From Macrostomum lignano (Eukaryota), in contig NIVC01000496.1 of assembly GCA_002269645.1 (NCBI GenBank), positions 1 through 64,000 of the forward strand: a DNA stretch of 64,000 bases. The letters run 5' to 3'. The number at the start of each line of letters is the position of its first letter. Within the stretch, counting starts at the first letter, position 1. The notes under the pieces were generated by a model. The model searched no databases, had not been told where the DNA came from, and was given only the letters and a program-made list of their open reading frames with translations. This document shows, one piece after another, positions 5,408 to 56,771 of this stretch. The position numbers and the translations under genes are program-made.

Positions 5408-5421
5408 GTAGCCATGGCAAC
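5408..5421. promoter_or_regulatory. Second RFX X-box
   Basis: GTAGCCATGGCAAC, ~480 bp upstream of the SAXO-like ATG in a GC-rich promoter-like region. Confidence 0.6.
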
Positions 5422-27270: not shown

Positions 27271-32139
<4,869 letters not shown>

Positions 32140-36823: not shown

Positions 36824-39800
36824 ATGCTGCGGATTTTGCTGCTGCTGCTGCCGCTGCTTCTGCTGCAGCAGCTGCTTGGAGTCAGCGGCCAGGCGCAGGA
36901 AGGTGAGGCAATCGGCAAGATTTCCCCCGAGTAAAATCGCTAAAGCTTGCTTAATAATATGAGAACTTAGAGTTTCTCATCATAGGACAGTATCTCTCAC
37001 GAGCTCACAGCTTTAAATTAAAATCTGAAACTCTCGAACTAAGTGCCAGAGTCTTGAACTAGCTCTAACTCTCGAACTAAGTGCCAGAGTCTTGAACTAG
37101 CTCTAACTCTCGAACTAAGTGCCAGAGTCTTGAACTAGCTCTAACTCTCGAACTAAGTGCCAGAGTCTTGAACTAGCTCTAACTCTCGAACTAAGTGCCA
37201 GAGTCTTGAACTAGCTCTAACTCTCGAACTAAGTGTCAGAGTCTTGAACTAGCTCTAACTCTCGAACTAAGTGCCAGAGTCTTGAACTAGCTCTAACTCT
37301 CGAACTAAGTGTCAGAGTCTTGAACTAGCTCTAACTCTCGAACTAAGTGCCAGAGTCTTGAACTAGCTCTAACTCTCGAACTAAGTGCCAGAGTCTTGAA
37401 TGGAGGCAACCAGAATCGCAAAGTCTGCGACATCAAAGGTGAAGGTCCTGCTACTTGTCTTCTTTGATGCAAGGGACATGTGTCAAGCAGTATCTGGTGA
37501 ACAGCAATGTTACTTTGCTGGAGCAGTTTCCATCCAGGGATTTTTTCCTGAATCTCAGAGAGGGGGCGCAAAGGAACTCTTTTTCCCAACATAGATCATC
37601 AGGAGAGCCACAACGAAGGAACTTTGGAGTGTTCAGACCACATGCACACAGAACTTCTTAAGGAACGACCTGGGAGAGGTTTATAGAAATTATATGCACT
37701 ACTTTTTAAACTTTTCAGAGTCCTACACCTTGGTGATCAAGACTGGCAAAACGGGGACCACCAACAAGGTTTTCTTCAGCCTTAAGGGCCAGATGGGCGA
37801 TTCCCCACAGCAGAGCATCAACTTTGATGGCTCCGACAAGCCTATCACGAGCATGTTCACACCGGGAAAGTGAGTGCCTTCACTGGGCTAGGGGAGCATT
37901 CCCAAGAGCACAGCATGTTCACACCGGGAAAGTGAGTGCCTTCACTGGGCTAAGGGAGCATTCCCAAGAGCACACAGGATGTTCACACCGGGAAAGTGAG
38001 CCCAGTTCACTGGGCTAGGGGAGCATTCCCAAGAGCACACAGGATGTTCACACCGGGAAAGTGAGCCCAGTTCACTGGGCTAGGGGAGCATTCCCAAGAG
38101 CACACAGGATGTTCACACCGGGAAAGTGAGAGCCTTCACTGGGTTAGGGGAGCATTTCCCAAGAGAACATCTGCAACAGTCGCTGCCATTCTCTCTCGCA
38201 AGGGTGGATGTCATCGAAGGCAAATTTCGCGGAGCCCTGGGCTACATCAGCACAGTGAAGGTCAGCCAGGACTCTTACAATGGCTGGGAAATCGAAAGTG
38301 TAAGTTGTCTTGCACTCGCTTGTCTGCTTTAAGTAGTTATTTAGGAGTCGCAGTGCTATGCTCATACCCTTTGGCCCCTTTGGCCACTGAAAGTGCCAGA
38401 CTGGCGCGACCGAGTTCAGTTTTTGTTGTCTCTCTCAGTTAACAGCCACCTCATCAGTGGTATCGCTGATGTGCAAAGAACAACCGAAATCGGAAGGCCT
38501 TAGAATCCTGTTACACCGCGTTTTATGTTTCTGTTAGCGATGCATCATTATGTTTGCTGCAATTCCACGTGCCCTCTCAGATTGTGGTCTTCAGTGACAC
38601 CACCAGGGTGTCCAACAACGAGACCTACATTGTTCGGCAGCCCCAGGACATCAGCTTCAACGGTGAGCAGCGAATTGTCCTTGCTCCATGCTATGACATT
38701 CCCATGACCCATGTGAGCACCGACACTGTGCTTTCCTGCTCCATGCTATGACATTCCCATGACCCATGTGAGCACCGACACTGTGCTGTCCTTGCTCCAT
38801 GCTATGACATTCCCATGACCCATGTGAGCACCGACACTGTGCTTTCCTGCTCCATGCTATGACATTCCCATGACCCATGTGAGCACCGACACTGTGCTGT
38901 CCTTGCTCCATGCTATGACATTCTCATGAACCATGTGAGCACTGGAACTGAGCTGCCCTTGCACCCTGCTATGACATACCATAACCCAATGACTTACAGT
39001 GAACTGCGGCTGGAGCGCCTGGAGCAGCTGGATGACCTGCCAAGGCACCTGCGCCACAGGTGGGGTCCAGATGCGAATCCGCAACCCGAACAGCCCGCCC
39101 AGGATCAACTCTGGCAAAGCGTGCGAGGGCTCCGAGTTCGAGCAGCAGCCCTGCAAACTGGCAATGGACTGTCCGGGTAAGACTGGGCTTCGGGTGCTGG
39201 GTCCAGTAGCTAGGCATGCAACTGGGTAGCTGGGAATGCAACTGGATAGCTGGACATGCAACTGGATAGCTGGACATGCAACTGGATAGCTAGACATGCA
39301 ACTAGGTAGCTGGACATGCAACTGGGTAGCTGGACATGCAACTGGATAGCTGGACATGCAACTGGATAGCTGGGCATGCAACGGGGTAGCTTGGTAAGTG
39401 GTATTTAGTTTGCTTATCCGAGGTATGAAGCGGTGTCAAGAAGCCATATCGGGTATTATTAGGTCGAGTAAACTCAAGCTCAAACAGTAAACACCTGGCC
39501 AGGCCGAAACTTATTGAGGTAAAAATTGAGTCAGAATTTCACTACCAGCATGTACAGAGTCTATCGGCCACTCACTCCACCTGTCAATTTTTACACCCCA
39601 AATTCCACAGTGAATGGCAACTGGAGCGACTGGTCCCCCTGGAGCGCCTGCAGCGTCAGCTGCGCCCAAGGCAGCCGCAGCCGCAGCCGCACCTGTACGA
39701 ACCCGGCGCCCGCAAACGGCGGACTGGACTGTGTCGGCGCCGCCAGCGACACCGGAGTCTGCACCGAGTCGCCCTGCCCCAGTGCGTCCTCAGATCTTAC

Positions 39801-42800
39801 TCTGACTACTCTGAGTCGCTAGCAAATAACTCTGTAACTTGTATTGGAAACTTCTTATTATATCTGTCTGGCAGCTCAGACTCTTGTTACCTCATCTGGG
39901 ATTTCATCTCTGGCAATCACGGAAACCCTGATTTGATCAATCCGTTACTTCGCCGGCTGGCCCTGTGGGAAATATAGCTTACTATGTTAGACCAGGTGTC
40001 GGGTGCCAAAAAGCGGCCAATATTGCAGAAAGATCGACCCCAAGAGCTCCCCAAGCCAGCAGATCCGCACCCGCCCCGCAGTCGATGGCCAGTGGGGCAG
40101 CTGGTCCCCGTTCTCCGCCTGCAACGCCAGCTGCGGCCCCGGAGTCCAGACCCGAGCTCGCCTGTGCAACTCGCCAGAGCCGAAGTTCAACGGCAGGAAC
40201 TGCCAGGGCGACGGAATCGAGCTCAAGACCTGCGAGCTGACTCCATGTCCCAGTGAGTTGGGCTGGCTTCCATAGCAACCATCACCTACATAAACCTGTT
40301 GAGTCACGCTCCCGTAGCATTCACCGCAAAGTCACAGCCTCACAGCCCCATCCGTGCCCCAACCCGCTGAGTCCGTGGCGCACTCGAAGTGCTGGGGTGG
40401 GCGTTGCGTGCAGCAGCCGGAGTCGGGACGAGGCTTCAGCGCGGCCGTTTCCTCGGCAACTTGTCGCCAGGAATTGTCCGAGGTAAGGTGCCGAATTTAT
40501 CTCAGTAAATCTCTGTGTGCATGAATAGGCCTGCTTGAGCTGTGGTTGGATGAAAGCTTTCAAATTTATTCAGCGCAAACTCATTTTTACGATTTTTTAT
40601 AGCGTTAAAAAGACATATAGAATCGCTTCAACACTAAAGCTCGTATTTCACAAATCCTTTCTTCCATGAGCTGCTGGTCCTCAATGTGGACTGCAGCTCC
40701 AGTAGCTCTGGCACAAATCCTCACGCAATTCTGTCCATGAGCTGCTGGTCCTCAATGTGGACTGCAGCTTCAGTAGCTCTGGCACAAATCCTCACACAAT
40801 TCTGTCCATGATCTGCTGGCCCTCAATGTGGACTGCAGCTCCAGTAGCTCTGGCACAAATCCTCACGCAATTCTGTCCATGAGCTGCTGGCCCTCAATGT
40901 GGACTGCAGCTTCAGTAGCTCTGGCACAAATCCTCACGCAATTCTGTCCATGATCTGCTGGTCCTCAATGTGGACTGCAGCTTCAGTAGCTCTGGCACAA
41001 ATCCTCACGCAATTCTGTCCATGAGCTGCTGGTCCTCAATGTGGACTGCAGCTTCAGTAGCTCTGGCACAAATCCTCACGCAATTCTGTCCATGAGCTGC
41101 TGGCCCTCAATGTGGACTGCAGCTTCAGTAGCTCTGGCACAAATCCTCACGCAATTCTGTCCATGATCTGCTGGTCCTCAATGTGGACTGCAGCTTCAGT
41201 AGCTCTGGCACAAATCCTCACGCAATTCTGTCCATGAGCTGCTGGCCCTCAATGTGGACTGCAGCTTCAGTAGCTCTGGCACAAATCCTCACGCAATTCT
41301 GTCCATGATCTGCTGGTCCTCAATGTGGACTGCAGCTTCAGTAGCTCTGGCACAAATCCTCACGCAATTCTGTCCATGATCTGCTGGCCCTCAATGTGGA
41401 CTGCAGCTTCAGTAGCTCTGGCACAAATCCTCACGCAATTCTGTCCATGAGCTGCTGGCCCTCAATGTGGACTGCAGCTTCAGTAGCTCTGGCACAAATC
41501 CTCACGCAATTCTGTCCATGAGCTGCTGGCCCTCAATGTGGACTGCAGCTTCAGTAGCTCTGGCACAAATCCTCACGCAATTCTGTCCATTATCTGCTGG
41601 CCCTCAATGTGGACTGCAGCTTCAGTAGCTCTGGCACAAATCCTCACGCTTCACTTTAACAGTCATAAACAGAGCCGGAACGGCTGCACCAGGCTATGGC
41701 AGTCCCAACAAGAACTGCAACCCGACAGCCCGACATTCCAGACCAGCTTTACTTTATTGCTAATGGCTGGCGACTGAGATGCCCACTCCAGAGCCGTCTG
41801 CATCTCCAGATTCCCTCGCAATCGAACTCACAGGTTCACAAAGTTACACAGTTCTGTGGCATTCTGTTGGTGCATGGGTGCGTCTGAGAGCAACTCTGCG
41901 ATTTTAATTTGCATAAATTAAGCCTGGCTGCCACCTCAGATTCAAGAGACAAAATGCCATCTTGATACCAGATTGCTCTTCGCCATAAGTCAGTGGATCC
42001 TCAGCTGATGCCCATCAGTCAGAGGATCCTCAGCTGATGGCCCATCAGTCAGCGGATCCTAAGCTGATGGCCCATCAGTCAGTGGATCCTAAGCTGTAGG
42101 CCCATCAGTCAGCGGATCCTCAGCTGATGGCCCATCAGTCAGCGGATCCTCAGCTGATGGCCCATCAGTCAGCGGATCCCAGACAATAGCCAATGAGTTG
42201 TTTCCCATATCGCCCAAAGCAAATTCGATGAACATCCCGCAGTCGACGGCGGCTGGTCCAGCTGGGGCGAGTTCTCCAGCTGCTCGAGCTCGTGCGGCGA
42301 CGGCATCGAGATTCGAAACCGGCCCTGCACGAACCCGCCTCCCCAGTTCGGCGGGCGGCCTTGTCCGGGGAGCGCCAACGACTCGAGGTCATGCAATCTC
42401 AGGCCATGCCCGAGTGAGTGGCTAGGGGCTTCCCAGCAGTTTAATGGTGGTCGAATATCGGGATTTAATAAAAACTGCACGAGAGACCCGCAGAGACTCG
42501 AGATGTCCAATCCCGAACCCCTAAACCTTCCAGTTGACGGCCAATGGAGCGAGTGGTCCACCTTCTCTGGGTGCAGTCGCAGCTGTGGCTCCGGCAAGCA
42601 GTGGCGCGGCCGCCAGTGCGCCAGCCCGGTCCCGCAGTTTGGCGGTCTCGACTGCCCCGGCGGAGCCAACGAGACCCGCGAGTGCAACACCAACCCTTGT
42701 CCAGGTGGGTGCTTCGCGTGGAACCAGTTTCCTGATCGAAGACTTAAATCCAGAGAAAGTAGAGAGAATCATTCGAGTAAAAGGGTTGACCACGTGTCCA

Positions 42801-45800
42801 TTGGCAAGATAATATGACTTTTAGACTCTCTCAGCAGCCAGCCTCCCTGCATCCGACGCCATTTTCTTGAACTTCCCTGCAGTGGACGGCGGCTGGTCTG
42901 CCTGGTCCGCCTTTGCTGACTGCAGCGTCACCTGCGGCAACGGCAGCCACAGCCGCCAGCGCAGCTGCAGCAGCCCGGAGCCGCAGTTCGGAGGCCTCAA
43001 CTGTTCTGGCGAGGCGGTCGAATTCGGCAACTGTAACCCCCGACCTTGCCCGAGTGAGTGACAGCCGCTGCTCCCCCTGCCAGCCCCACCTGCCCGAGTG
43101 AGTGACAGCCGCTGCTCTCCCTGCCAGCCCCACCTGCCCGAGTGAGTGACAGCCGCTGCTCCCCCTGCCCATCCCCACCTGCCCGAGTGAGTGACAGCCG
43201 CTGCTCTCCCTGCCAGCCCCACCTGCCCGAGTGAGTGACAGCCGCTGCTCTCCCTGCCAGCCCCACCTGCCCGAGTGAGTGACAGCCGCTGCTCTCCCTG
43301 CCAGCCCCACCTGCCCGAGTGAGTGACAGCCGCTGCTCTCCCTGCCAGCCCCACCTGCCCGAGTGAGTGACAGCCGCTGCTCTCCCTGCCCAGCCCCACC
43401 TGCCCGAGTGAGTGACAGCCGCTGCTCCCCCTGCCCATCCCCACCCTGCCCGAGTGAGTGACAGCCGCTGCTCTCCCTGCCCACCCACCCTGCCCGAGTG
43501 AGTGACAGCCGCTGCTCCCCCTGCCTATCCTAGCCTTGCCCGAGTGAGACTACCGCTTGTCGGGGCTCGGGTCTGGCTGCTCACTTCTTCATCGTACAGC
43601 TCACCTCCTCACATATTTGACCTTTTAATTAGCTTTCGAATAGACCAGAATTTATTACGAGCATTGAGTGCATGGTCCGGATGCGCAGTAATTAATAAGC
43701 CGTGGCAGCACTGGACAACCCATGCACTCGCAATGGCAATTAAATCTCAGTGCTTCAAGCCAAGCCATGCCATGGAACTCTCCCGCAGTTGACGGAGCCT
43801 GGACCAGCTGGTCTGACTACTCGGCCTGCTCGCTCACCTGCGGCAGGGGTCGCCAGTGGAGCCAGCGGAGCTGCAGCGCTCCGGAGCCGCAGTTCGGCGG
43901 GAAAAACTGCCCAGGAAACTCCACCCGCGACCGAGCCTGCCTGGTCACTGAGTGCCCCGTGGACGGCCTCTGGGGATCCTGGGGCGCCTGGGAGAGCTGC
44001 AGCGTCACCTGCGGCAGCGGCACCGCCTGGAGGAGGCGGCACTGCGACTCCCCGGAGCCTCAGTTTGGCGGCAGCCGCTGCAGTGGTGCAGGCAACGAGA
44101 GCACGCCCTGCCATCCGGAGGACTGCCCCAGTGCGTGCTGCCGCATGGTCTTGCTTCCCGTTTCCCCTGTACTCAGCGCATTTGTGCTTGGGCCATTTTC
44201 GCCTATTCCCCGCCCCTGGTTTGTCAATCCAGCTGCACCTTGCAGACGCCGTCACCCGTTCACAGTCATCCCGCCGTTTCTTCCATATTATTTTTTTCAA
44301 TTCTCCGTCATCGCCCGAATTTCAGTAAACGGCGGCTGGTCGCCCTGGTCGGAATTCACCGCCTGCTCCAGGTCTTGTGGGGGCGGCCAGCGCAGCCGCA
44401 CTCGGCGGTGCGACTCCCCGCCGCCCCACGCCGGCGGCGCTGACTGCGTTGGCAGCGGAAGTGACGTCCAGGACTGCGGCACGGACCCTTGCCCAGGTCT
44501 GGCTTGTCTCCTACAAGACTATGCGATATGAGTTATGACCCCGCTGCCAACTATAGCAAGATTTTCCATCTATATTAAGCTGTTGCGTTTGTGTACGGTT
44601 GGGTTGCCAGACAGAAGAATGCCTGCAGGGCCATAGACTTCAGCAGGGGTGTAGCCAGTGAGACAAGGGTGCCGCTGATAAAACTCATGTCACCCCTTCG
44701 CAACTGATTTGGAGCCCATTCACGTCAGTTGTGGTGTCCCCTACCTGCTGATTTGGCCCCCTCACAGAAGGTGAGCCCTTGGTGCCCCTTGATGCTGGCG
44801 CCCCCTTGGTGCTAGAGCCCGTTGTTGATGGTGCTTTAGTGTCTCTGGGAGTATCTAATATTTTGACCGGGTTGAAATTGCTGTCGCCAAACCGATTGAG
44901 GTGTATCGTCCTTCCTGTCTCGTTTTTGTTTCTGGTCTGGAAAAAGCGCAAACTTGAAATCATGAGATGCTGAAGAGAATTCACAGATGCATTTTTTATA
45001 TCCGCCCTCACCCCAGTGAACGGAGGCTGGGCGCAGTGGAGCGCCTGGGGCAGCTGCTCCAGGAGCTGCGGCTCTGGCCTGGTGCAGCGCAGCCGCGGCT
45101 GCACCAACCCTGTGCCCGAATTTGGGGGCGACGACTGCGCTGGCGAGGCTGTCCAATCCACCGCCTGCGACATCCCCGTCTGCCCCGGTGAGGCCCGCCC
45201 TGCCCCAAACACCGCCTGCGACATCCCCGTCTGCCCCGGTGAGGCCCGCCCTGCCCCCAAACACCGCCTGCGACATCCCCGTCTGCCCCGGTGAGGCCCG
45301 CCCTGCCCCCAAACACCGCCTGCGACATCCCCGTCTGCCCCGGTGAGGCCCTCCCTGCTCTCTACCGGGTACTGCTCAGGATGACCCCTCAGCTCCCAGC
45401 TGACTTTTAAAGCTGATTAATCGGGTCGTCAGGCTGTTTAACGGCTCTGCAGCCCCGACCCACGAAGCCTTTCGAGAGTCAAAAAGTCACTGGAATCACA
45501 GAAATTCATGAGTTTTTTGTTCCATCTTTTTGTTAACTAGTTTGTTTCTTGATATTCTGTTTGACCTTTTCGTTCGCAAAGATTTACCTTTCTGCCAATC
45601 TGCCTTAAAAGCGAAGTGTAACTGAGCCGCCTGCCAATTCAATTCCATTCCCAATTCAATTCCAGTGAACGGAGGCTGGGGGGCATGGGGCCAGTGGGGC
45701 GACTGCAGCCTTAGCTGCGGTGGCGGCAACCAGCTGCGCTCTCGTCAGTGCGACTCGCCGAGACCGCAAAACGGCGGAGGAGCCTGCGTTGGCACCGCCA

Positions 45801-48800
45801 GTGACGGCAGGCAGTGCAACACGGACCCCTGCCCCAGTGAGTGCCCTCGTTTGTCCACACAAATTACTCATGTCTTCAGCACCACTCGACTGACTTCGGG
45901 CTTTCAACTTAGGGTTTTACCTGAAAGCAAGTCACACAGACATCCGCCCTCTCCGACTGCAGTTGACGGTGGCTGGTCAGCCTGGAGCGAGTGGTCCGGC
46001 TGCTCCACCAGCTGCGGTACCGGCAAGTCGACCAGGCAGCGCGGCTGCTCGAGCCCTGTGCCGCAGTTTGGTGGCCGGGGCTGCTCAGGCAGCGGCTCAG
46101 ACATTCGCGACTGCCAACAAGGGCCCTGTCCAGGTGCGTTTCCTTGACCACTGACGTGACTTGGTCTTTCATGAATATATCTATGTATGAAAATATTGTG
46201 GCATGGAATCGCTTCCGATTTTATGTGCTCATCAACAGTGCACGGAGGCTGGAGCGAGTGGACCGAGTTCTCGAACTGCTCCGTAACCTGCGGCAATGGA
46301 ACCCGTAGCCGGAGCCGCAGCTGCAGCAGCCCGGCCCCCCAGTACGGTGGCCGCTTTTGCCTGCCCTGCACCGCAAACCTTACCTATCCGGAGTCTGCCG
46401 ACAACGCCTCTGTCTCTTTGGCAACTGTTGTCAAGGACTACGTGAGCGTTGAGGACAATTGCTCCTACAAGGGAAACTACTATGAGGTGGACGGCGATCT
46501 CATAATTTGGGACGATGACGTTCAGTACGCGAACTGCAGCATGGAGCCCTGCATATGTGAGTCACCCCATCGTAGGTCCTTTGGTCTCCCTATAAATTAG
46601 CGATTGCACATTTACTTCGTACCTCAACCCTCTCAATACGCAGCGACCCTTGCTGACAAGGCCAACAGTTTCGTTGACGAATTCCTCAAAGGCCTGAACA
46701 ACTCAGGGACCAACAAATCCGTAAGTGCAGGAGAGCCCCTAGTTGCAATTTCGCTCAATTACTTTGCACCTATTTTGTAATTGCGGCTGCATCTTCTCTC
46801 TACGCTGGCCCGCAGGACTCGGAGTCCATGAAGGCCGCACAGGAGATGGTGAACAAGATTACAAACCTGTTGGCAGATCAGCTGAAGAACGCGGAGGTGG
46901 GTAAGCCTGTGATGATCGACGCCAAGGGCGTCTCCGTCGGCGTGTCGAAGGTGAACTCGTCCAACATGGCGGGCTCCGAGATGAAGTCCGGTGACAAGGG
47001 CGGCATCGTGCTGGGCGACGCAGAAGATACCGGGGTCGAGGGCCAGGACGCCAGTCTGAAGTTCTCAGCCCTGGACCCAAAGACCTTCTTCCCGGGCGCC
47101 GACAAGAAGGACCAGTCCGCGGCAGTTGTTTCCCTCAACCTGGCCCAGGGAACTGAAGTGAGTTGGGCTTTTCCCGGCCATCAGTGCTGAGCCAGAACCC
47201 AAAATGTCTCCTGGAAATCTGATTCATTTCATTATGGCAATTGATTTTAGGTGGTGAAGCCAAGCAACGCCTCAAAGGTGTCGCTAACGCTATCGCTGCC
47301 CAACCAGAACCAGGAGACCACCGAGAACCTGCTGCAGCCGGTGGCCATGAAGCGTGGCAAGCGGATGGTGCAGAAGTTCACGTTCGAGGCGGCGAACACT
47401 GCCATCAAGGTATGAGCAGCAGCGAGCCTCACTGCATTGTCTGAAAAATCGTGCTGTGAGACAGTGCGCAGAAAAGTTAACTGAGCTCCGATGAAGAAAT
47501 GAAGAAAAAACCGATAGCCGGGATGCATTAGCGGGACCTTTCAATGAATTTGTCGCCCCGCCCCTCAGGCGTCACTGGAGCTGCCATCTTCGGACTCCTA
47601 CCTGATGATGTTCCGAGGCGGCGTCCCGGCCAACTTCAGCAAGCAGGCGAACTTTACGGCTTGGGTGCACTCCAACGAAACCATGAAGATCGAGACGGAC
47701 GGCAGCCTGGAGGTCCGGCTGAAGTTCGACACCGCCTTGGCGGCTGCTCGGCGGCGACGGCGACGCGAGACAGCCTCGCCGGAGAAGCCGCTGACGCTGA
47801 GCGTGTTCATCCCCGGTGGCCAGATGGCGGCGGGCAGCGCCGTTTTCATGTCGCTGGAGCTCGCGGACAACGGGACGGCGGCGGCAGCCTCCGGCAGCAA
47901 CGTGACGACGGAGTCGGCCAACATGAGCCTGACGGTGGGGGTGGCGTCCATTACGCCGAGGGCGTGGAGCGACCTGCTGGGAGGCTGGGTGGACACGGAC
48001 GCAGAGGTGGCGGAGGAGTCCAGCATCGAAAAGATGGTGTTCAAGAGCAACTTCTTCGGCTCGTACTCGGGCAAGATGTTCATCGCGCCCAACACCATCA
48101 ATTTTGCCACCGTTTTCAACAACTTCGCGGGCAAGCTGGCTGAGAACTTTGTCACGCTGTTGGTGCTGTGTCTCATCATAGGCATCTACGTGGTCGTCTC
48201 CGTCTGGATGTGGCGACTGGACCGACAGGAGGCTGCCAATGTAAGTGCCAGCAGGCTGGGACTACGGCAAATTTGGATTACTTGCCACTGGGTCTCCGCA
48301 TGTATAGGCCTTATTAGGCAGTGTCGGTGTTACGTTGAACATATGTGGTACAGTCACACAGTATAAATTCCCTTAAGCTGTGCACAAAGGCTGCCTGAGC
48401 AATAATAAAGATCTAAGGATGATTTGGATTGCCAGAGTGAGCTAAGGGGACAGTGGCTAAGTGTTCTATTAACATATTTATTTGAGAGTTAACGCAAGCG
48501 CTAGTTCCTCTGAGATGGAAGAGTTTTGTTTTTACTGCAAGATTTATACTTTTTATTTCGAGGCTATGAGCTAAGTAGCCGATCTTTGTACACACTGCAT
48601 GCTTCAACAAATGGAATGATTGGCACAGCATGCGGTCTCAACCCAATCCACTCACTCAGCTGCGGTATGAGCCCCTGGAGGACAACGAGTTCGACAATGA
48701 CTACACCTTCATCATCAGCGTGTACACCGGGGACGAGTCCGGCGCCGACACCACCTCGAATGTGTTCATCAACCTTGCGGGCACCTGGGGCTCTTCTGGC

Positions 48801-51800
48801 AAGCGCCAGCTGTCTGACGGAGTGCGCCAGAACTTCTCCCGCGGCTCCGTCTGCAACTTCGCAATGACCACCAGGGCTCCTCTCGGCGAGTTGCGCGGCC
48901 TGAAGGTCTGGCACGACAACAGCGGCAAAAAGCCGGGCTGGTTCCTGGAGAAGATACTCATCGAGGACCTGCAGACCAAGAAGAAGTGAGTTTCTTCTTG
49001 TCTTTCTTCCTGTCTAGCTCGTGTTCAGCATGTCCGCCCTTTTGCCGCTTGGCTGGTTTGTTGCTTTTACATGTAACACTGTGTGGTGGCTTTCAAACTG
49101 GATCATCGTTTCAGATGTATCTGTATATGCTCATATTAGTCATGAGTCTCTCCTCGGAACACTGCGATTCCGGTGGAGGTTCATAGATTCGAGGAATGCA
49201 CAGGAACCCACTAAATGCCCACGAATTTCACTATTTCAGGAAACTTCACATCTTTAAAATGCTGGCCTATTTTCATAACTCTTAATTCTGGGCATATCAG
49301 GGTGTAAAGAAAGCAAAATTAGGGATAGAATTAGGGATAGAAGGTGGAAATTTTATTTGAATAGTACAAAGCCTAGCGATTTTTGCGCCTTCCACTAAGT
49401 TCATTGCTAAGTCTACGACAATGCGAAACATTTAGCCAATTTAGCACAAGACGTTCAATGTGCTACACAGTCTGAATCTGCAAATTCCTTGCCCAAACTC
49501 ACCTGCAGCTATGTCTTCATGTGCGATCAGTGGCTGGCTGAAAACAAGTTTGACAGCCGTACCATGCGGGTGCTGCCCGAGGTGAAGCAGGACCAGCGCT
49601 TCCAGGAGATGATGCTGCGGTACAAGGCGGGCGGGGTGGTCAACAAGCACGTGATCACGGCGCTTTTCCGCAAGACCGGCCAGTCTAACTACTCCCGGCT
49701 GCAGCGCACAGGTGTGGCCAACGCCATGTTCTTCCTCACAATGGTGTGCAATGCCATGTGGTACGGCAAGGGAGACGACCTGGATGCCGAGGCTAACTTC
49801 AGCATCGACCTCGGCCCGATTTCGGTCACCTGGTTCCAGCTGTACTCTGGCATTCTCTCCATGGCCATCACCTACCCCTGCATCTTCGCGGCGGCTGAAA
49901 TCTTCCGCCGAACAAAGAAATGGCAGCGTCGCTGGAGCGAGGACGATGTGGAGAGCAAGAAGAAGGAAATTCGGCTGCCCAAGGGCTTCCTGGTCATCGG
50001 CTGGGGCCTCCTGCTCCTGGGCGTAGGGCTGAGTTTCTTCTTCACCTTCCTTTACAGCATCGAATGGGGCAAGGAAAAGGCCAACGGCTGGCTCAAGAGC
50101 TTCTTCCTGGGAATCCTGCAGTTGGTGGTGGTCACAGATCCCATCTGCCTGCTTATCGTGTTCGTCGTGGCCAAGAAGATCTTCGGCCAGAAAGAGTCGG
50201 AGGAAAACGTCTTCGAGCTGGATGATCTCATTAATGATGATCTCAAGCAGGTGAGGAGCCGAAACGATATGTTAATTGGTGGTAGTTATAGATAATTTAG
50301 TTCCGTATCTCTATTCTTGTAGCTATCTTTGAAAAGCTACAGCAATAAATGCTATTTTGATGTATCTTCCTTCATGCGGCATTTGTCTGTCCTCGCTCCG
50401 ATCACAACAGTTGCTGCCATCTAAATGGTGCTTCCACAACTCATGCCACACCTTACACACTTTCAGGTCCTGGATGGCACTGAATACGCTCCCCCGGACC
50501 CGACTCGGATGGAGGAAATCCGAGCTGAGCGCCGAAACAACCAGAAGATGTCGCAGACATTCACGGACGTGATGTCCTATGTGGTGTACATGTTCCTCCT
50601 CGTCGCTCTGGCTTACGACTCACGTGACCAGGTCAGCTTCCGCCAGAACCAAAACTTAAAAGACCAATTCCTCACGGCCGCGCCAACCCGGTTCAATGAC
50701 TTTAAGCACGTTTTCGACTGGCTGAATGGCAGCATCGTGCCCAGACTGTACCGAACCACCGAATACAACGGCGAACCACTCACTGGAGACCTCAAAGATG
50801 CGATCGACACGTGTGACTGCATCAAGCAGGGACCATTCAGGCTGAGGCAGCTGAGGGTCAATCCACGTGAGTCTAGGCTTTCCTAGTTGAAAATATTTGG
50901 GACTTATAGGATCCACTGCTTCTGGGGTTGCCACTGGATGGATTTAGCAGGTGGCTGCAGCAACCAGCCCTATCTCCCACAGGCAAGTGCCCGGTAACGT
51001 GGCCGTTCAAGGCGTACCCCCAGAAATCGTGGATCTGCTCATCGGACTTCTCTCCCCAAGCGGCGGACCAGGCGGTTTACCGTCCGCTGTGGCTGCCCGA
51101 CAGCAACGGCTGGGTGCGGAATGCGTCATTGCAAATGCGGGCAAAGTCGCAGATCAAGCGAATGCGGCCGGATGAAATCGTTCTACAAGCCTTTTGGTAC
51201 CGTAGCGCTGACTCCATGATGAGCTTCCCGTTCGAGGGCGCCTTCACAACCTACCCGGGTGATGGCTATGCAGCCACGCTCGGGCTCAACAGTGCTGAGG
51301 CCATGTGAGTCCCAAACTCAAACGCTCACGCTGCTGAACGCTGTAGTTTTGTGAAAAGTGGCGGTGTGAAAAACTTGCAAAAAAGAAGCATATTCTCCCT
51401 GGTTTGAAGCGAAATGCATACAAACGCCTTAAAACTTTTTTCGTTTTTTTCCTATCGTGGACCCACAGGTGGATCATCAACCGGCTGCGGGCCACCAACT
51501 GGTTGGACGAGAAGACTCGAGCCATGTTCCTGGAGGGCACGGTGTACAACGCCAACACCAACCTGTTCACCACCATACAGATCCTGTTGGAGTTCCCGGC
51601 CGCAGGCGGAATTCTCACCTACAAGAACGGAGTCCGCACCTACCGCCTGTACAACTACACCGGCGGCAAAGGCATCATCCTCATGGCCATGCAGGGCCTG
51701 TTCGCCCTCATCTGCCTGTACCAGATCTATCGGGAGACGCGCAGCCTTCTCACGCTACGACTCAAGTACTTCGATGACCTGTGGAACAAGATCGAGTTCG

Positions 51801-54800
51801 TTAACATCCTGCTGTGCATCACAATCATGATCACGTACGGCATCCGCATCAAAATCACCATCGACTCCATCGAGCTGATGATGAACAATAGGGGTGAGGG
51901 GCGGTGCTCGATTTAGTGAATTTGTTGTGAATTCTATTCCTGGCTGCGTGGCGTTTAAAATTTTTGTTTTGCTAGGCGGAAAAACACGCTGTTGTCACAA
52001 TAACTCAACAGAAGTTCTAAAACAGCACAATTCCATCCCTTCAGCATGCTGTTGTTTCCCTGCGTCCCTTCAGTCCTCAGTTTAAGTTGTTGCCGTGTTT
52101 AATACACTAGTGCTTGGGAAAAAATGCTGGAGAACAACAGACAGCTGTATTAATTCCCTTTCCCACAGGAATGTACGTGGCTTTCGACAACGTTATTGAG
52201 TGGGTAGAGGCAACATGCGTGGCCATGGCTCTAAGTGTGTTCCTCACGATCTTCCGGGTGCTGAAGTTCTTGGGCTTCAACAAGCACATCGCCATCCTGC
52301 TCGCCACCGTGAAGCAGTGCGCCCGCCAGTTGTCCTCGTTCGGCGTCGCCTTCGTGCTGATCATGGCGGCCTTCCTGTCGGCTGGCACGATCCTGTTCTC
52401 GTTCACCGAGGCCAGCTTTGCCTCCGTGCTGTCCAGCTGCCGTTCGCTCTTCACCACCGCACTCGGCATTCAGGGTTACACGCAGATCTTCGTCAACAGC
52501 CAGGGCACGACTGCCAGCCTCATCTTTTTTGGCGGCTGGTCTTGCCTGGCGGTCTTTTTTCTGGTGTCAGTCTTCGTGTCCATCCTCACAGACACCTACA
52601 GCGTCGTGGTCAGCGACGGCCTCTATAGCTACGATGAGGAGTTTGTCAACCACATGTGGAGCAAGTGAGCAAAGTGGTCAAGTGCACCTACTCCCGAATG
52701 TGTTAAGTGTAGTTGGTAGGAACTGGTCTTCGAAGAGTTTTGGAGCACATGGAATGTTGTATGCTGGTGGTGTTCATGGATTAGTCCGGTCCATGTGTTA
52801 GTGTGCTATGCACTGGTCTGGCGTATTTGCGTGCCAATCTGTTGGGGCTTTAACTACATACTTGCAGCATGTGTCGCTAGGCTAACCAGCCTTGATCATT
52901 CATTTACCTCATATTGGAATCCAAAATGCACTATGCTGCAAAATCATGCTTTCGAAACTACAGATTCATGGGTACTATGGCCAGCATTACGTCAAAGAAG
53001 GACGAGCTGGGCGAGGCGCTGCAGAAGAGTGTCAGCGCTGTCAAGCGTCGAATGGGTGAGCCTAAGTTCAAGGATCAGATACATAACAATCCGTTGCTTT
53101 CACTGCTGCTAATTTCTTTTCGCAGTGACGGAGGACGACATCGAGATTCAGCTTAATGAGGACCGGCGCCAGGAGTCCGTTGGCGGGGCCGAGGAGAGCT
53201 CTGGCGGCAAAAAGGCAAAAGACAGTAAGCCTTGCTCAGTTCTTGGAGCCGGAGACTACTCGTATTTATGGATGTACTAATTAGACATAGCTCGTAAAAG
53301 TATCTCCAGCACAGCATGTTAAAAGTTCGCGTTTGCGGGTTCGCTCAAATTAGCAAGTATCCACAGAATGACACGTGCAAACATATAAAAAGTGCTCTCG
53401 AACATAAAGAGCATGTAACCCTACATCTCCCCTTCTCCCCTGGCCCGCAGTCAACCCGGGCTCAAGATGAAGCTAGCGGTGGTAAACAGGGACAAGCCGG
53501 AGACCGGAGAAAGCTACGTCTGGACGCCCAAAGAGACGGGAGATGAGGTGCTCGTTGACGCCGGTGAGCTGAGCGCCGTTGCCACAGAGGACGCGGAGCC
53601 GGGCTGGATCCCCAGGTTCAAGTCAACCGCACTGGACTTGCAGCCGCCAGGACTTGACGACAGCGGGGCGTCGGCTTTCCGCTTTGACCCGCTGGGCGAC
53701 AGCGCCAGGTCCGGCCTGCACCTTCTGTGTGTGTGTGTATTAACCTACGGCTCGGGTCCCAGCCCGCCGAGGAAGGTCGACTCCAGGAAGGTGGACGTCT
53801 CAATTGGGTTGTTCCAAAGGTCACTAGGGCAGAGCGGCGTCGGATAGACAGGGCAGTCGAAAAGATGGACCACCGTTTGGGGCTCCAGACCGCAATCAGG
53901 ACAGACCGCGGCGACGCCTGGTTTGATTCTCGACTGAAAATCTTGGAGAAGCGGGCAGAAACCGGAGCGGAGCTGCGCCAGTATGCACCGCATGCGGCGG
54001 GGGAGGCAAGTTTCGGAGCGATGGATCGCTGGCCGTTGTGTTTGAATAACACGGTTCTGTGGCAGGCTGTCCAGCATGGCCTGTACTGCCTGCGTATGCT
54101 GGGCCCGCCTGGCGCGATCCCAGGCAGCAGCGTCAAGGACGTCCGGGGCCGGAACCGGCGTCCAATCAGCATTAAAGTGTTCAGCCGTGAAGATGGAGGC
54201 TTTCATGAGTCTGCGCGGCGGCGGAAGGCCAGAAAGGTGGTGACAAGGGAGTTCAGGGCGTCTAGCGCGAAGCTTGAACTGGAGCGAAAGAAGTCGGTTG
54301 TGCTGGCGGACGGTAAGCAACTGGACTTCACTATGAAGATCCGCTTCAGAGGTAAGGGCAGTGCAGCCGGTGATGCCGCGAATCGCTGCATTCTGGACCG
54401 ATTGCAGCCGCGTCCAGGACGAGTTGGAGATGATAGGGCCCCAGACCGGAGCAGCATAGTCGAGCAGGCTTCTGCCTAACGCTTTGAAGGTGGTCAGCAA
54501 AAGTTCCTTGCAGCAGCCCCAGGAGGAGCCGGCGAGACAGCGTAGCAGGCAGTTCCTTTTCCGGGTTTTTTCCGCAAGAGTGGTAACGTGTCTAGCGAAG
54601 GAGAGCTTAGGGTCGAAAGTCACACCAAGAATTTTCGGATAGAGGGCTTGCGGTAGTAATGAGCCGTTGATGGACACGTTCAGTTGACGAGAGTACTCGC
54701 GCTGATCCGGACTGAACAGAGTGGAGGAGCACTTTGATGTAGAAATTTGGAGCTTGCGCGACTCAAGGAACGGAGCAAGGTCAGCGAGATAGCTGTTCAG

Positions 54801-56771
54801 TTGTTGTTCAATAGAATAACAGTTTGGGGATGAGGCGGCAACGGTAAGATCGTCAGCGTAACCAATTAGTTTAGTGGCCGGATTGGATGGCACAGGAGCT
54901 TTAGCCAAGTAAAAGGCAAAAAGAAGCGGGCTGATGGCGCTGCCCTGTGGAACTCCCATGCGAACCTGCCGCCACTTCGACTTAAAGTCTCGCATGACGG
55001 TCCGAGCTTGACGACCAAGAATGTAGTTGGCAAGCCAGGCCTTAACAGTGTTAGGAAGATCAGACTCGGCGAGATCAGAGAGTAATTCGTAGTGGTCAAC
55101 GCAGTCGAATGCCATCCGAAGGTCGATCGCGCTAACGCCGGTCCTGGCCGGCGGTTTTGGCAAACAAAAACCTGAGCAGATCTGCTCAACCAGTTGGCAG
55201 AGGGCGGTCACGGTGGAGTGATGCGGACGAAAGCCATGTTGCCAGGCCGGGAGCTGGAGGTGGTCAGTCAGTAGCGGAAGCAGGATCTTCTCCAGAATTT
55301 TGACGAGCGGCGAGAGAAAGGAGATAGGGCGATACGACGCACCATCGTCCTGCGGTTTACCATCCTTCAGAAGGGGACAGATTAAGGACTTCTTCCAGAC
55401 CGCCGGGATCTCATTGTAAGCGATTGAGCGATTGAAGAGGTTTCGGAGCACAGCCTTCGCCTTCGGACCAAAGTGCCTAATGACGAGCGGGCAGATTCCA
55501 TCAGGGCCGATGGCCTTGGAGGGTTTGGACCGCTTGATGGCCATTTCGATGTCGTCAGTCGAGAAGACAGGGGCGTCTTCAGCGGCACGAGCAAGGCCCT
55601 TAAGACGTCGACGAACGACGCGCATCTGCGGGTTGGAGCAGTGAAGGCGCGGCCTCGTGAACTGACAGTTGAGACGGTCCGCAGTTTCGGCACCAGAAAG
55701 GGCCTGTTTTCCGTTAAACTTTAAAATGACATTCTTATCCGCGTTAGGACGACCGGTCAGCTTTTTAAGAGTGGACCAGATTCTAGAGGACGGGGCAGGC
55801 TGGTTGCCATTCTCTAAGAGAAATTCGTTCCAGCGCACCCGTCTCTCCGCTTCCAGACTTGAGTTGATTTGTGCTTGAAGGTCCGCGATACCGGGGTCCG
55901 ACGGGTTGTTGGTGCGAAGAGCGTCGCGCGCAGATAAGAGTTGACTAATTTCCGGTGAGCAGGGATCCGGGCTCTGCTGTTTGAAACGACCCTCCGGGAT
56001 CGCAGTCTTCATGGCCGACAGGATCAGCTTACGGAAGGCAGCTTCTTGAGTATGAGCAGAACCGGTGCCGGTGAAGTTGTCCAGAGAGCTCTCGAGGGTA
56101 TTGGTGAAGAGCTCCCAGTCTGCCCTCCTAAAATTGATGAAGCATCTACGAGCCGCGGTGGTCGCCATACTGGACACACCCAACGAGATGATGATGGGCA
56201 GATGATCGCTAGAGAGTGTGTGAAGAATGTCGTAGTCGGCCTTCAGGAGTAAAGATTGATGGACAGCCGTAACGTCAGGGGTCGAGGGAGGTCCGTTGCT
56301 AGGCAGTCTGGATTGGGCTGGCGTGGATAGAAAGTCGAAAGGAGCTTGTTCGACCTGGAGGGCAAGCAGGTCCCCGCGCGTTCTGTCGTCGAAGCCTGCG
56401 GCTCTGCCACCACTGCAGGTGAGTTGCTTTGGTGTGCAAAAAGATAGCGCTCAGAGTCAAATACAGCTTCGAGCGCGTCCATGAGTGAATCCAATAAGGA
56501 TCACTAAGGAAAAAGCTCACAATAAGGATGATTAAGGATGATCTGGATGATTAAAATACGTGTACTTCAGCATATTCGTACTGCATTTATCCCAAAATTG
56601 CACTGTAGCTAAAAGTTCAGTAACTGGTCAAACTTGAATTTGCTCATGCGATCTCTGTCTCGACAGGCTGATGAAAAAAAAGCGAAAAAGAAATCCAAGA
56701 AGGACAAGCGGCAGCCTGGCTCAGGCTCTGGTACTGATGAGACGCCGAAGCAGCTAGACTCGGAGATTTAA
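36824..56771 (+). CDS. PKD1-like: Polycystin-1-like (PKD1L/PKDREJ class) 11-TM receptor-channel with TSP1-repeat ectodomain, ~2450 aa, 30 exons
   Basis: Signal peptide exon 36824-36902 ([22 protein letters not shown]). PLAT-like exons 37719-37869, 38203-38299, 38581-38662. TSP1 exons (WSxWSxCSxSCGxG..R.R.C) at 39000-39176, 39611-39781, 40082-40252, 42243-42413, 42534-42704, 42883-43053, 43789-44130 (x2), 44326-44496, 45017-45187, 45666-45836, 45963-46133, 46239-46556. GAIN/TM1 at 46644-46720, 46816-47157, 47251-47409, 47569-48240. PLAT at 48660-48985. TM/channel exons 49509-50250, 50467-50866, 50983-51304, 51469-51893, 52169-52664. Tail exons 52964-53055, 53126-53224, 53451-53728 plus 56387-56418, and 56667-56771. 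One phase mismatch at 53224/53451. Confidence 0.9.
37030..37399. repeat. 38-bp tandem array (~10 copies), polycystin intron 1
   Basis: Unit CTCTCGAACTAAGTGCCAGAGTCTTGAACTAGCTCTAA. Confidence 0.95.
37853..38160 (+). repeat. ~61-64-bp x5 repeat copying the exon 2 end plus donor site
   Basis: Unit ATGTTCACACCGGGAAA|GTGAG...CATTCCCAAGAGCAC. Confidence 0.9.
38680..38935. repeat. ~55-bp x5 intronic tandem repeat
   Basis: Unit CTCCATGCTATGACATTCCCATGACCCATGTGAGCACCGACACTGTGCT... Confidence 0.9.
39205..39390. repeat. 20-bp x~9 intronic tandem repeat
   Basis: Unit GGATAGCTGGACATGCAACT. Confidence 0.9.
40663..41650. repeat. 71-bp x~14 intronic tandem array
   Basis: Unit TCCATGA(G/T)CTGCTGG(T/C)CCTCAATGTGGACTGCAGCTTCAGTAGCTCTGGCACAAATCCTCACGCAATTCTG. 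Confidence 0.95.
41985..42180. repeat. 30-bp x~6 intronic tandem repeat
   Basis: Unit CCCATCAGTCAGCGGATCCTCAGCTGATGG. Confidence 0.9.
43045..43550 (+). repeat. ~43-44-bp x11 repeat copying a TSP1 exon end plus donor site
   Basis: Unit CCTGCCCGA|GTGAGTGACAGCCGCTGCTCTCCCTGCCAGCCCCA. Confidence 0.95.
45160..45348 (+). repeat. 51-52-bp x4 repeat copying a TSP1 exon end plus donor site
   Basis: Unit ACCGCCTGCGACATCCCCGTCTGCCCCG|GTGAGGCCCGCCCTGCCCC(C)AAAC. Confidence 0.95.
53729..56380 (-). mobile_element. 5'-truncated LINE (APE remnant, RT, C-terminal Cys/His motif, no RNase H; tentatively I-group/Ingi-Vingi-like) with uninterrupted ORF
   Basis: The minus frame is open from 56380 to stop 53745. 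It contains RGDLLA..., [31 protein letters not shown] and [15 protein letters not shown]. (AC)n 3' tail. TSD TTCTGT at 53723-53728 and 56381-56386. Confidence 0.92.

What the first reader, a model, noticed from the sequence alone, without database searches (positions are those of the whole stretch)
36824..56771. Polycystin-1-like receptor-channel with a 13x thrombospondin-1 ectodomain
The spliced sequence gives signal peptide, PLAT-like domain, 13 TSP1 repeats, GAIN, TM1, PLAT, then 10 more TMs with a polycystin (TOP/S1-S6) module. Vertebrate PKD1-family ectodomains use PKD, REJ and C-lectin domains. TSP1 + GAIN is the layout of BAI/ADGRB adhesion GPCRs. This protein therefore joins an adhesion-GPCR-like ectodomain to a polycystin channel and is a candidate ciliary mechano- or adhesion sensor (inference). 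I recall TSP1-bearing polycystins from some invertebrates, so novelty is not established.
Basis: partly seen in the sequence, partly recalled or inferred. Interest (0 to 1): 0.75.

Follow-up and report, generated by a model that had tools for sequence, protein, structure and literature searches.

The report
Flatworm polycystin-1-like gene with thrombospondin repeats
This is a real 20-kb gene of the flatworm Macrostomum lignano for a polycystin-1-like channel subunit carrying 13 thrombospondin repeats. It is the counterpart of planarian pkd1L-2, a published flow and vibration sensor gene, so it is a good annotation rather than a new kind of protein.

Summary
A + strand gene runs from the ATG at 36824 to a stop at 56769-56771.

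Architecture:
- Signal peptide and a weak N-terminal PLAT-like domain.
- 13 TSP1 repeats.
- A roughly 340-residue stalk homologous to the GAIN/GPS region of PKD1-like proteins.
- TM1, a PLAT domain, TM2-5, a polycystin (TOP) domain and a PKD channel.

The window is Macrostomum lignano. The GenBank model BOX15_Mlig015709g1 uses the same splice junctions. It is cut off before the channel by a 1-bp C-run difference.

The closest relative anywhere is Schmidtea mediterranea PKD1L-2 (40% identity over 1,600 residues). It has the same layout with 4 TSP1 repeats. In planarians that gene marks ciliated mechanosensory neurons and is needed for flow and vibration sensing.

The resemblance to BAI adhesion GPCRs is superficial. 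GAIN is native to PKD1 proteins, and there is no 7TM or HormR domain.

Modest new points:
- The GPS cleavage motif and its cysteines are replaced by FKSNFFGS in a spiralian clade.
- The TSP1 array and N-terminal PLAT-like domain occur only in the two flatworm proteins among the 150 closest relatives.
- In this haplotype a LINE insertion and a 1-bp indel disrupt the C-terminal tail exons.

The parts
36824..36902 (+). Exon 1: start codon and signal peptide ([22 protein letters not shown]|QAQ)
   Evidence: ORF and splice scan. Identical N-terminus in GenBank P0001. Hydrophobic segment at residues 2-20.
37719..38662 (+). Exons 2-4 (37719-37869, 38203-38299, 38581-38662): extracellular N-terminal PLAT-like beta-sandwich domain
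   Evidence: Pfam PLAT 23.1 bits against a cut-off of 23.0. hhalign against a PLAT profile gives 62%, E 7e-5. Conserved in Smed PKD1L-2 residues 21-145 and in no other top-150 relative. No PDB sequence hit. Support is weak.
39000..46556 (+). Twelve exons encoding 13 TSP1 repeats. Exons: 39000-39176, 39611-39781, 40082-40252, 42243-42413, 42534-42704, 42883-43053, 43789-44130 (two repeats), 44326-44496, 45017-45187, 45666-45836, 45963-46133, 46239-46556. The last exon also holds a Cys-containing linker. All but the double exon are one repeat per exon with phase-1 introns.
   Evidence: Pfam TSP_1 with 13 stretches, E 2e-136. 11 repeats have 6 Cys and 2 have 5; all have WxxW and CxxS/TCxxG. Pairwise identity is 26-60%. 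Junctions match P0001.
46644..48240 (+). Exons 46644-46720, 46816-47157, 47251-47409, 47569-48240: stalk homologous to the GAIN/GPS region of PKD1-like proteins, then TM1
   Evidence: hhalign of the clade stalk profile against canonical C.C.HLT stalks gives 99.9%, E 5e-32 over 333 columns. No Pfam GPS/GAIN hit. No PDB profile hit. The AlphaFold model was unusable (pLDDT 31).
48040..48063 (+). Degenerate GPS motif FKSNFFGS, in register with canonical CxCNHL|TSFG. The His-Leu-Thr cleavage triad and all four GPS cysteines are absent.
   Evidence: Multiple alignment with 45 PKD1-like relatives. The same variant occurs in Smed, Owenia, Lingula, Argopecten and Haliotis proteins.
48148..48204 (+). 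TM1 ([19 protein letters not shown])
   Evidence: Hydropathy 2.95. Aligned to polycystin-1 TM1.
48660..49539 (+). Cytoplasmic PLAT domain (exon 48660-48985 plus the start of exon 49509-50250)
   Evidence: Pfam PLAT 65.5 bits. Aligned to the polycystin-1 PLAT in 6a70_B.
49540..50250 (+). TM2-TM5 region
   Evidence: Aligned to polycystin-1 6a70_B residues up to 332. Hydrophobic segments at residues 1565-1674. TM2 is assigned by homology only.
50467..51893 (+). Exons 50467-50866, 50983-51304, 51469-51893: TM6 (S1), extracellular polycystin/TOP domain, S2-S3
   Evidence: Pfam Polycystin_dom E 1.8e-34. PKD2L1 and PKD2 structures match at E 1e-32 to 1e-39.
51017..51021 (+). C5 run that keeps the frame here. 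The GenBank haplotype has C4, which truncates its annotated protein before the channel.
   Evidence: Pairwise alignment of window and L001. P0001 goes out of frame after KAYP.
52169..52664 (+). Exon with S4, S5, pore loop (ALGIQGY at 52459-52479) and S6 (52522-52578)
   Evidence: Pfam PKD_channel E 4.3e-24 and Ion_trans E 7e-12. Pore alignment shows the PKD2 filter LGD replaced by LGI.
52964..53224 (+). Two small C-terminal tail exons (52964-53055, 53126-53224)
   Evidence: Splice scores. Codon-usage scores of 0.42 and 0.59 in frame. Both are in frame in the two haplotypes. There is no transcript evidence.
53451..53727 (+). Penultimate tail exon, 5' part. The frame is broken in this haplotype by a C3 run at 53455-53457 (C4 in the other haplotype).
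   Evidence: Alignment with L001. Translations of both haplotypes. Coding score 0.42 in the ORF frame.
53728..56380 (-). Non-LTR retrotransposon (LINE) inserted into the penultimate exon, flanked by a TTCTG target-site duplication. It carries an 812-aa ORF at 53745-56183 with a reverse transcriptase domain. It is absent from the GenBank haplotype.
   Evidence: Pfam RVT_1 E 1e-29. Window against L001.
56381..56413 (+). Last 33 nt of the penultimate exon ([11 protein letters not shown]) before the donor CAG|GTGAGT
56667..56771 (+). Last coding exon ([34 protein letters not shown], then stop)
   Evidence: In frame with the upstream exons in the LINE-free haplotype, giving 2,450 aa in total. 98% identical between the haplotypes. 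Poly(A) signals at 57134 and 57352.

Best explanation
The locus is the Macrostomum lignano orthologue of planarian PKD1L-2, an 11-TM polycystin-1-family (PKD1-like) protein of about 2,450 residues.

Shown here:
- It is one gene with an intact reading frame through the channel.
- The domain order is signal peptide, PLAT-like domain, 13 TSRs, GAIN-homologous stalk, TM1, PLAT, TM2-5, TOP domain and S1-S6.
- It lacks the acidic pore-filter residue of PKD2-type subunits (LGI instead of LGD).
- It lacks every residue needed for GPS autoproteolysis.

Inferred from the orthologue and from solved PC1/PKD2 and PKD1L3/PKD2L1 complexes:
- It is made in ciliated mechanosensory neurons.
- It assembles as the single non-canonical subunit with three PKD2-like subunits. 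M. lignano has at least one, BOX15_Mlig009158g1.
- The complex transduces water flow or vibration into cation influx.

More speculative:
- The glycosylated TSR array (roughly 50-60 nm if extended) and the N-terminal PLAT-like domain may act as an extracellular tether or matrix-binding arm.
- Because the GPS cannot be cleaved, this arm stays covalently joined to the channel core.
- Force would then be passed directly, rather than by shedding of an N-terminal fragment.
For: Gene structure:
- Splice model and open frame.
- Junctions identical to GenBank P0001 across the TSP1, stalk, PLAT and TM2-5 exons.

Domains and family:
- Pfam domains.
- Solved polycystin-1, PKD2 and PKD2L1 matches at E 1e-32 to 1e-42.

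Orthology:
- Best hit of 1.84 billion representatives is Smed PKD1L-2 at 705 bits; the next scores 418 bits.
- End-to-end alignment is 40% identical over 1,616 columns, plus the N-terminal domain.
- Pfam gives the same architecture.
- It is sister to Smed PKD1L-2 in an NJ tree.

Stalk and pore:
- GPS motif alignment.
- Stalk homology 99.9%.
- Pore alignment.

Function of relatives:
- Smed pkd1L-2 is expressed in the rheosensory organ, is co-expressed with pkd2L-1 and pkd2-4, and its RNAi reduces mechanosensory behaviour (PMC11448475, PMC12626421).
- Polycystin 1/2 pairs occur in multiciliated sensory neurons of Schistosoma (PMC11349301).
- They also act in Platynereis hydrodynamic sensing (PMC6294549).
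Against: - There are no expression or functional data for the M. lignano gene.
- Exons 25-26 and the tail exons have no transcript support. They rest on homology, splice signals and codon usage.
- The GAIN fold was not confirmed by structure. The AlphaFold model failed and there was no Pfam or PDB hit.
- The N-terminal PLAT assignment is marginal.
- In this haplotype the C-terminal tail is disrupted by a 1-bp indel and a LINE. This copy may make a shortened tail or be impaired.
- The tether role of the TSRs is untested anywhere.
Confidence: 0.75

Rival explanations
1. This particular copy is a decaying or impaired allele. The LINE insertion and the 1-bp deletion in the tail exon truncate the cytoplasmic C-terminus. 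The protein would end about 130 residues early (...KAKDINPGSR) or read into LINE sequence. The functional gene would then be the other haplotype or homeologue.
For: - The window has C3 where L001 has C4 at 53455-53457, giving a stop six codons after the acceptor.
- The LINE has a target-site duplication and lies inside a coding-like exon.
- M. lignano carries several near-identical copies of many loci (background knowledge).
Against: - The 2,313 codons upstream are open and about 99.7% identical at protein level to the other copy.
- Single-base differences in C runs are typical long-read assembly errors. The other assembly has one too, at 51017.
- The tail is not conserved with the planarian protein, so its loss may be tolerated.
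Confidence: 0.15
2. The TSR ectodomain makes the protein mainly a ligand or matrix-binding (adhesion or chemosensory) receptor in the manner of BAI/ADGRB, rather than a mechanosensor. The channel would be gated by binding of an extracellular partner.
For: - TSRs are binding modules in BAI1, thrombospondin, UNC-5 and others (background knowledge).
- There are 13 well-formed repeats.
- Another planarian family member, pkd1L-1, has a chemosensory RNAi phenotype (PMC11448475).
Against: - The direct orthologue pkd1L-2 gives a mechanosensory, not chemosensory, phenotype (PMC11448475).
- There is no 7TM or HormR domain.
- The GPS is non-cleavable, so an adhesion-GPCR-type tethered-agonist release is unlikely.
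Confidence: 0.1
3. The TSP1 exons and the channel exons belong to two adjacent genes that were wrongly merged.
For: None was found. It is listed only because there is no RNA-seq for this window, and the GenBank model stops before the channel.
Against: - The GenBank stop is explained by a 1-bp indel.
- P0001 already joins the TSP1 repeats to TM1, PLAT, TM2-5 and the start of the polycystin domain.
- The planarian PKD1L-2 protein has the same continuous layout.
- Intron phases are compatible throughout.
Confidence: 0.02

Closest known systems
Schmidtea mediterranea PKD1L-2 (AKN21725.1, dd_Smed_v6_13975_0_1)
   Same: - The order is the same end to end: signal peptide, N-terminal PLAT-like domain, TSP1 repeats, stalk with FKSNF(F/L)G in place of the GPS site, TM1, PLAT, polycystin domain and PKD channel.
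- Identity is 40% over about 1,600 residues.
- The two are sisters in the tree.
   Different: - It has 4 TSP1 repeats against 13 here.
- Its pore loop is VAI rather than LGI.
- Its C-terminal tail is unrelated.
- Function is known only for the planarian gene.
Human polycystin-1 (PKD1) and PKD1L1-3/PKDREJ
   Same: - 11-TM core.
- PLAT after TM1.
- TOP/polycystin domain and a six-TM channel-like module.
- A GAIN-homologous stalk next to TM1.
   Different: - No LRR, WSC, PKD-Ig, C-lectin or REJ Pfam hit here.
- The ectodomain is TSP1 repeats plus a PLAT-like domain.
- The GPS lacks HL|T and its cysteines, so cis-autoproteolysis is not expected.
Spiralian PKD1-like clade (Owenia CAH1800511.1; Lingula XP_013397161.1 and paralogues; Argopecten XP_069131790.1; Haliotis XP_071110902.1). 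This may be the invertebrate 'PKD1-1' family of Platynereis (PMC6294549); that link was not tested.
   Same: - The same Cys-less (V/I)x[11 protein letters not shown] variant.
- The Owenia and Lingula members grouped in one clade in the channel-region tree; Argopecten and Haliotis were not in the tree.
   Different: Their N-terminal modules are PAN, CUB/fn3 or C-lectin, not TSP1. None has the N-terminal PLAT-like domain.
BAI/ADGRB adhesion GPCRs
   Same: TSP1 repeats followed by a GAIN-type stalk next to the membrane.
   Different: - No HormR domain and no secretin-like 7TM.
- The stalk is homologous to PKD1-family stalks.
- The GPS is not cleavable.
- The membrane part is an 11-TM polycystin.
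- The resemblance is in domain types only.

Membership tests
Polycystin-1 (PKD1-like) family | Cytoplasmic PLAT/LH2 domain directly after the first transmembrane helix | tested here: met
   Pfam PLAT 65.5 bits. Aligned to the PC1 PLAT in 6a70_B.
Polycystin-1 (PKD1-like) family | C-terminal six-TM polycystin channel module with an extracellular polycystin/TOP domain between S1 and S2 | tested here: met
   Polycystin_dom E 1.8e-34 and PKD_channel E 4.3e-24. PKD2, PKD2L1, PC1 and PKD1L3 structures match.
Polycystin-1 (PKD1-like) family | Eleven transmembrane helices | tested here: met
   Hydropathy finds TM1 and nine further segments. TM2 falls below the threshold but aligns to PC1 TM2.
Polycystin-1 (PKD1-like) family | GAIN domain with a GPS motif (CxC-HL|T) immediately before TM1 | tested here: inconclusive
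   The stalk is homologous to canonical PKD1-like stalks (hhalign 99.9%, E 5e-32). However, there is no Pfam GPS/GAIN hit, HL|T and the four Cys are replaced by FKSNFFGS, and the fold is not confirmed.
Flatworm PKD1L-2 orthology group | Closest relative is Smed PKD1L-2, with shared lineage-specific features (N-terminal PLAT-like domain, TSP1 array, GPS variant) | tested here: met
   A reciprocal search against a full M. lignano proteome could not be run.
Flatworm PKD1L-2 orthology group | Expression in ciliated mechanosensory neurons and a requirement for flow and vibration sensing | not testable with these tools
   Known only for the S. mediterranea gene (PMC11448475, PMC12626421).
Adhesion GPCR, BAI/ADGRB subfamily | Secretin-like seven-TM domain after the GAIN domain | tested here: not met
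   No 7tm_2 hit. The membrane part is PLAT plus a polycystin channel.
Adhesion GPCR, BAI/ADGRB subfamily | HormR domain between the TSP1 repeats and GAIN | tested here: not met
   No Pfam hit at E <= 0.1 in the stalk.
Thrombospondin type 1 repeat (TSR) | A module of about 55-60 residues with six cysteines, a WxxW layer and CSxTCG | tested here: met
   13 Pfam stretches. 11 repeats have 6 Cys and 2 have 5. All have WxxW and CxxS/TCxxG.
PLAT/LH2 domain (N-terminal, extracellular copy) | Significant match to the PLAT profile or fold | tested here: inconclusive
   Pfam 23.1 bits against a cut-off of 23.0. hhalign 62%, E 7e-5. No PDB hit.

The most novel reading that the evidence does not exclude
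Spiralians may have a distinct PKD1-like lineage in which the GAIN domain has permanently lost autoproteolysis. In flatworms this lineage acquired an extracellular PLAT-like head and a long TSR rod. The whole ectodomain would then work as a covalently attached gating tether linking the sensory cilium to extracellular matrix. If so, it would be a polycystin gated by direct pull rather than by stalk/tethered-agonist exposure. The change from 4 to 13 TSRs would tune tether length between species.
Probability: 0.2. Interest if true: 0.55.

Novelty: new member of a known kind. Interest (0 to 1): 0.3.

Why it matters
- It corrects a public annotation. The M. lignano protein in GenBank and UniProt is listed only as a PLAT-domain protein without its channel, because of one base in a C run.
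- It gives the full-length orthologue of a gene already used as the marker of planarian mechanosensory neurons, in a second, transgenic-capable flatworm model.
- It brings out two features of this protein group that the papers I read do not discuss: the thrombospondin-repeat ectodomain and a GPS that cannot be cleaved.
- These features bear on the open question of how polycystin-1-type ectodomains gate or regulate their channels. The PC1 stalk/tethered-agonist model depends on GPS cleavage, so a natural non-cleavable clade with a clear behavioural read-out is a useful comparison.
- It does not reveal a new kind of molecule.

Tried and rejected
- The word-indexed protein search with the stalk-to-channel half was swamped by multi-PLAT LOXHD1 proteins.
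- The same search with the channel half returned only PKD2-type proteins.
- The same search with a two-species stalk profile returned only another M. lignano fragment.
On the permitted 599-aa fragment P0235 with a three-row alignment it gave pLDDT 31. I therefore ran no fold search and make no structural claim.
- Profile searches of PDB sequences found nothing with the N-terminal domain or with the stalk.
- tblastn with the planarian C-terminal tail found no conserved tail exon.
- I considered a gene end at the in-frame stop at 53278. I rejected it because 53225-53277 scores as non-coding, the donor at 53224/53225 is usable, and the LINE-free haplotype gives a clean ORF to 56771.
- I considered an acceptor at 53308-type positions for exon 19. 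I corrected it to 47251 from P0001.
- A link to the M. lignano adhesive proteins, which are also TSP1-rich (PMC6410801), was not pursued. The membrane half is clearly a polycystin.
Full report
**What is in the sequence.** Stop-free segments on the + strand between 36.8 and 56.8 kb have the look of eukaryotic exons. A GT-AG splice scan that enforced reading-frame continuity gave one best chain of 26 exons from the ATG at 36824 to 52664. This chain translates without a stop into 2,248 residues. In-frame codon usage of every exon is clearly above the two other frames.

Pfam finds the following on the spliced protein:
- 13 TSP_1 stretches (E 2e-136).
- A marginal N-terminal PLAT (23.1 bits, cut-off 23.0).
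- A solid internal PLAT (65.5 bits).
- Polycystin_dom (E 1.8e-34).
- PKD_channel (E 4.3e-24).

Among solved structures, human polycystin-1 is the best sequence match (6a70_B, E 1.8e-42). PKD2L1, PKD2 and PKD1L3 follow. Hydropathy shows a signal peptide, TM1 and nine further strong segments. TM2 is recognisable by alignment to polycystin-1.

**Organism and public annotation.** The nearest database protein is BOX15_Mlig015709g1 of Macrostomum lignano (P0001, 1,912 aa). It differs from my translation at a handful of residues and uses exactly my junctions. The one exception was exon 19, whose acceptor I corrected to 47251.

Its contig, NIVC01002969.1 of assembly GCA_002269645.1 (fetched as locus L001), is collinear with the window at 97-99.5% identity, introns included. 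It is therefore another haplotype, homeologue or assembly of the same locus.

P0001 leaves the frame after KAYP and stops 65 codons later. The cause is one base: the window has TACCCCCAG at 51017-51021 and the GenBank contig has TA-CCCCAG. Homology to polycystins continues in the window's frame. As a result the public protein lacks the channel and is named only as a PLAT-domain protein.

Neither protein collection contained any protein more than 50% identical to the channel half.

**The 3' end.** After S6 there are two small exons (52964-53055 and 53126-53224), and then a strong acceptor at 53451.

In the GenBank haplotype the chain is open all the way:
- It runs 53224 to 53451, then to the donor CAG|GTGAGT, then to the acceptor at 56667.
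- It ends in ...[12 protein letters not shown]-stop.
- The total is 2,450 residues.

In the window two things differ:
- The C run just inside the exon is C3 instead of C4, which gives a stop six codons later.
- A 2,653-bp non-LTR retrotransposon on the minus strand sits at 53728-56380, 33 nt before the exon's donor. It carries an 812-aa ORF with RVT_1 (E 1e-29) and is flanked by a TTCTG duplication.

Each assembly thus carries one C-run frame break at a different place, which points to homopolymer errors. The LINE has a target-site duplication, so it is a real polymorphic insertion. At most it affects the poorly conserved cytoplasmic tail.

No transcript data were available. Exons 25-26 rest on homology, and the tail exons rest on splice signals, codon usage and haplotype comparison.

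**Relatives.** A full HMMER scan of 1.84 billion cluster representatives with the post-PLAT half gave 4,368 hits.
- The best is PKD1L-2 of the planarian Schmidtea mediterranea (AKN21725.1), at 705 bits and 44% identity.
- The second is an Owenia fusiformis protein at 418 bits.
- The planarian protein aligns from the signal peptide to S6, at 40% identity over 1,616 columns plus the N-terminal domain.
- Pfam gives it the same architecture with four TSP1 repeats.

An HMM built from the 13 repeats here found TSP1 in only that one protein among the 150 best relatives. The N-terminal PLAT-like domain is likewise found only in these two. Other close relatives carry PAN (Owenia), fn3/CUB plus a Death domain (Lingula), or a C-type lectin domain (Lingula).

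A rough neighbour-joining tree of the channel region has no support values. It puts the M. lignano and planarian proteins as sisters inside a clade with Owenia and six Lingula paralogues.

**The stalk and the GPS.** Pfam reports no GPS or GAIN domain. An alignment with 45 PKD1-like relatives shows why.
- The block that reads C..W.....W...GC.V...S....T.C.CNHLTSFG...F.VPPN.IDF in most of them reads P..W.....W.......V.....S.....[23 protein letters not shown] here.
- The two tryptophans and the post-cleavage stalk sequence are kept.
- The four cysteines and the His-Leu-Thr triad are gone.
- The same variant is present in the planarian, Owenia, Lingula, Argopecten and Haliotis proteins. All of these are spiralians. 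The variant members that were included in the tree (planarian, Owenia, Lingula) fall in one clade.

A profile of eight such stalks aligns to a profile of 40 canonical stalks with 99.9% probability (E 5e-32) over 333 columns ending at the membrane. That is the size and position of the GAIN domain in this family, according to established knowledge of PKD1 proteins and adhesion GPCRs.

I therefore call the region GAIN-homologous with a GPS that should not self-cleave.

**The repeats and the pore.** Eleven of the 13 TSRs have six cysteines and two have five. All have WxxW and CxxS/TCxxG. By established knowledge of TSRs these are the consensus sites for C-mannosylation and O-fucosylation.
- The repeats are 26-60% identical to each other and 30-58% identical to the planarian repeats. 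The array is therefore old, not a recent amplification.
- Eleven of the twelve TSR exons hold one repeat each, bounded by phase-1 introns. One exon holds two repeats.

In the pore loop the PKD2-type filter ILGDF becomes ALGIQ here and FVAIV in the planarian protein. An M. lignano PKD2-like protein (BOX15_Mlig009158g1) keeps ILGDF. This is the pattern of a PKD1-type subunit that needs PKD2-type partners.

**Function.** No data exist for the M. lignano gene. The evidence comes from relatives.
- Planarian pkd1L-2 is expressed almost only in the ciliated neurons of the rheosensory organ.
- It is co-expressed with pkd2L-1 and pkd2-4 and depends on soxB1-2 and pou4-2.
- It gives reduced mechanosensory behaviour on RNAi (PMC11448475, PMC12626421).
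- Polycystin 1/2 pairs also mark multiciliated sensory neurons in Schistosoma miracidia (PMC11349301).
- They mediate the hydrodynamic startle of Platynereis larvae, whose PKD1-1 was said to define a new invertebrate family (PMC6294549).

The most likely role is therefore the PKD1-type subunit of a ciliary mechanosensory channel. The idea that the uncleaved PLAT-TSR ectodomain acts as a tether is my inference.

The anatomy and the functional guess stand. The reading as an adhesion-GPCR ectodomain fused to a polycystin does not stand.
- The GAIN-type stalk belongs to the PKD1 family.
- There is no HormR or 7TM domain.
- The TSRs are one of several N-terminal modules used in this clade.

The planarian papers I read, and the paper that first listed the planarian pkd genes, do not mention thrombospondin repeats in their text. 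The ectodomain and the dead GPS therefore appear to be undiscussed.

**Verdict.** This is a real, correctly delimited gene, and a new member of a known kind. Its interest is modest. It offers a corrected full-length model, a 13-repeat TSR array, a flatworm-specific extracellular PLAT-like domain, and a spiralian clade with a non-cleavable GPS.

Noticed in passing
window 37853-38169, 38676-38988, 43039-43548, 45159-45358: Several introns of this gene begin with tandem arrays whose unit contains the end of the exon plus its GT donor. Examples are a 44-bp unit CCTGCCCGA|GTGAGTGAC x11.4 and a 52-bp unit x3.9 with donors at 45187, 45238 and 45290. Up to eleven copies of a 5' splice site follow one exon.
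   Followed up: no
window 53728-56380 (- strand): A non-LTR retrotransposon with an intact 812-aa reverse-transcriptase ORF and a TTCTG target-site duplication. It is present here and absent from the GenBank haplotype, so it is a recent polymorphic insertion into a coding exon.
   Followed up: partly
window 51017-51021 and 53455-53457; L001 about 25050 and 27487: The two assemblies each have one single-base difference in a C run that breaks the reading frame at a different exon. The one in GenBank removes the whole channel from the public protein model.
   Followed up: yes
window 40659-41649; also 37029-37400, 39207-39391, 41983-42179: Large intronic tandem arrays: 71 bp x14 at 97% identity, 38 bp x9.8, 20 bp x9.2 and 30 bp x6.6. 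The 71-bp array produces long spurious ORFs in all three frames.
   Followed up: no
window 35755-36266: An 84-bp tandem repeat, 6.1 copies at 99% identity, lies about 560 bp upstream of the start codon. It gives 165-aa repetitive ORFs on both strands.
   Followed up: no
window 46816 vs 46843: Two public M. lignano protein models differ by nine residues (DSESMKAAQ) at this exon start. P0001 uses the acceptor at 46816, and P0235 a downstream one. This is either alternative splicing or a prediction difference.
   Followed up: no
window 11694-12486 (- orientation) vs L001 31347-32139: About 790 bp downstream of the gene in the GenBank contig matches, at 98.5% and inverted, a place 45 kb away in the window. 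This is a dispersed repeat or a structural difference between haplotypes.
   Followed up: no
window 4001-8000 and 28001-30000: There are strong local composition shifts: GC 0.55-0.59 against 0.26-0.34 nearby, and GC skew -0.32 at 28-30 kb. They lie outside the finding and were not examined.
   Followed up: no
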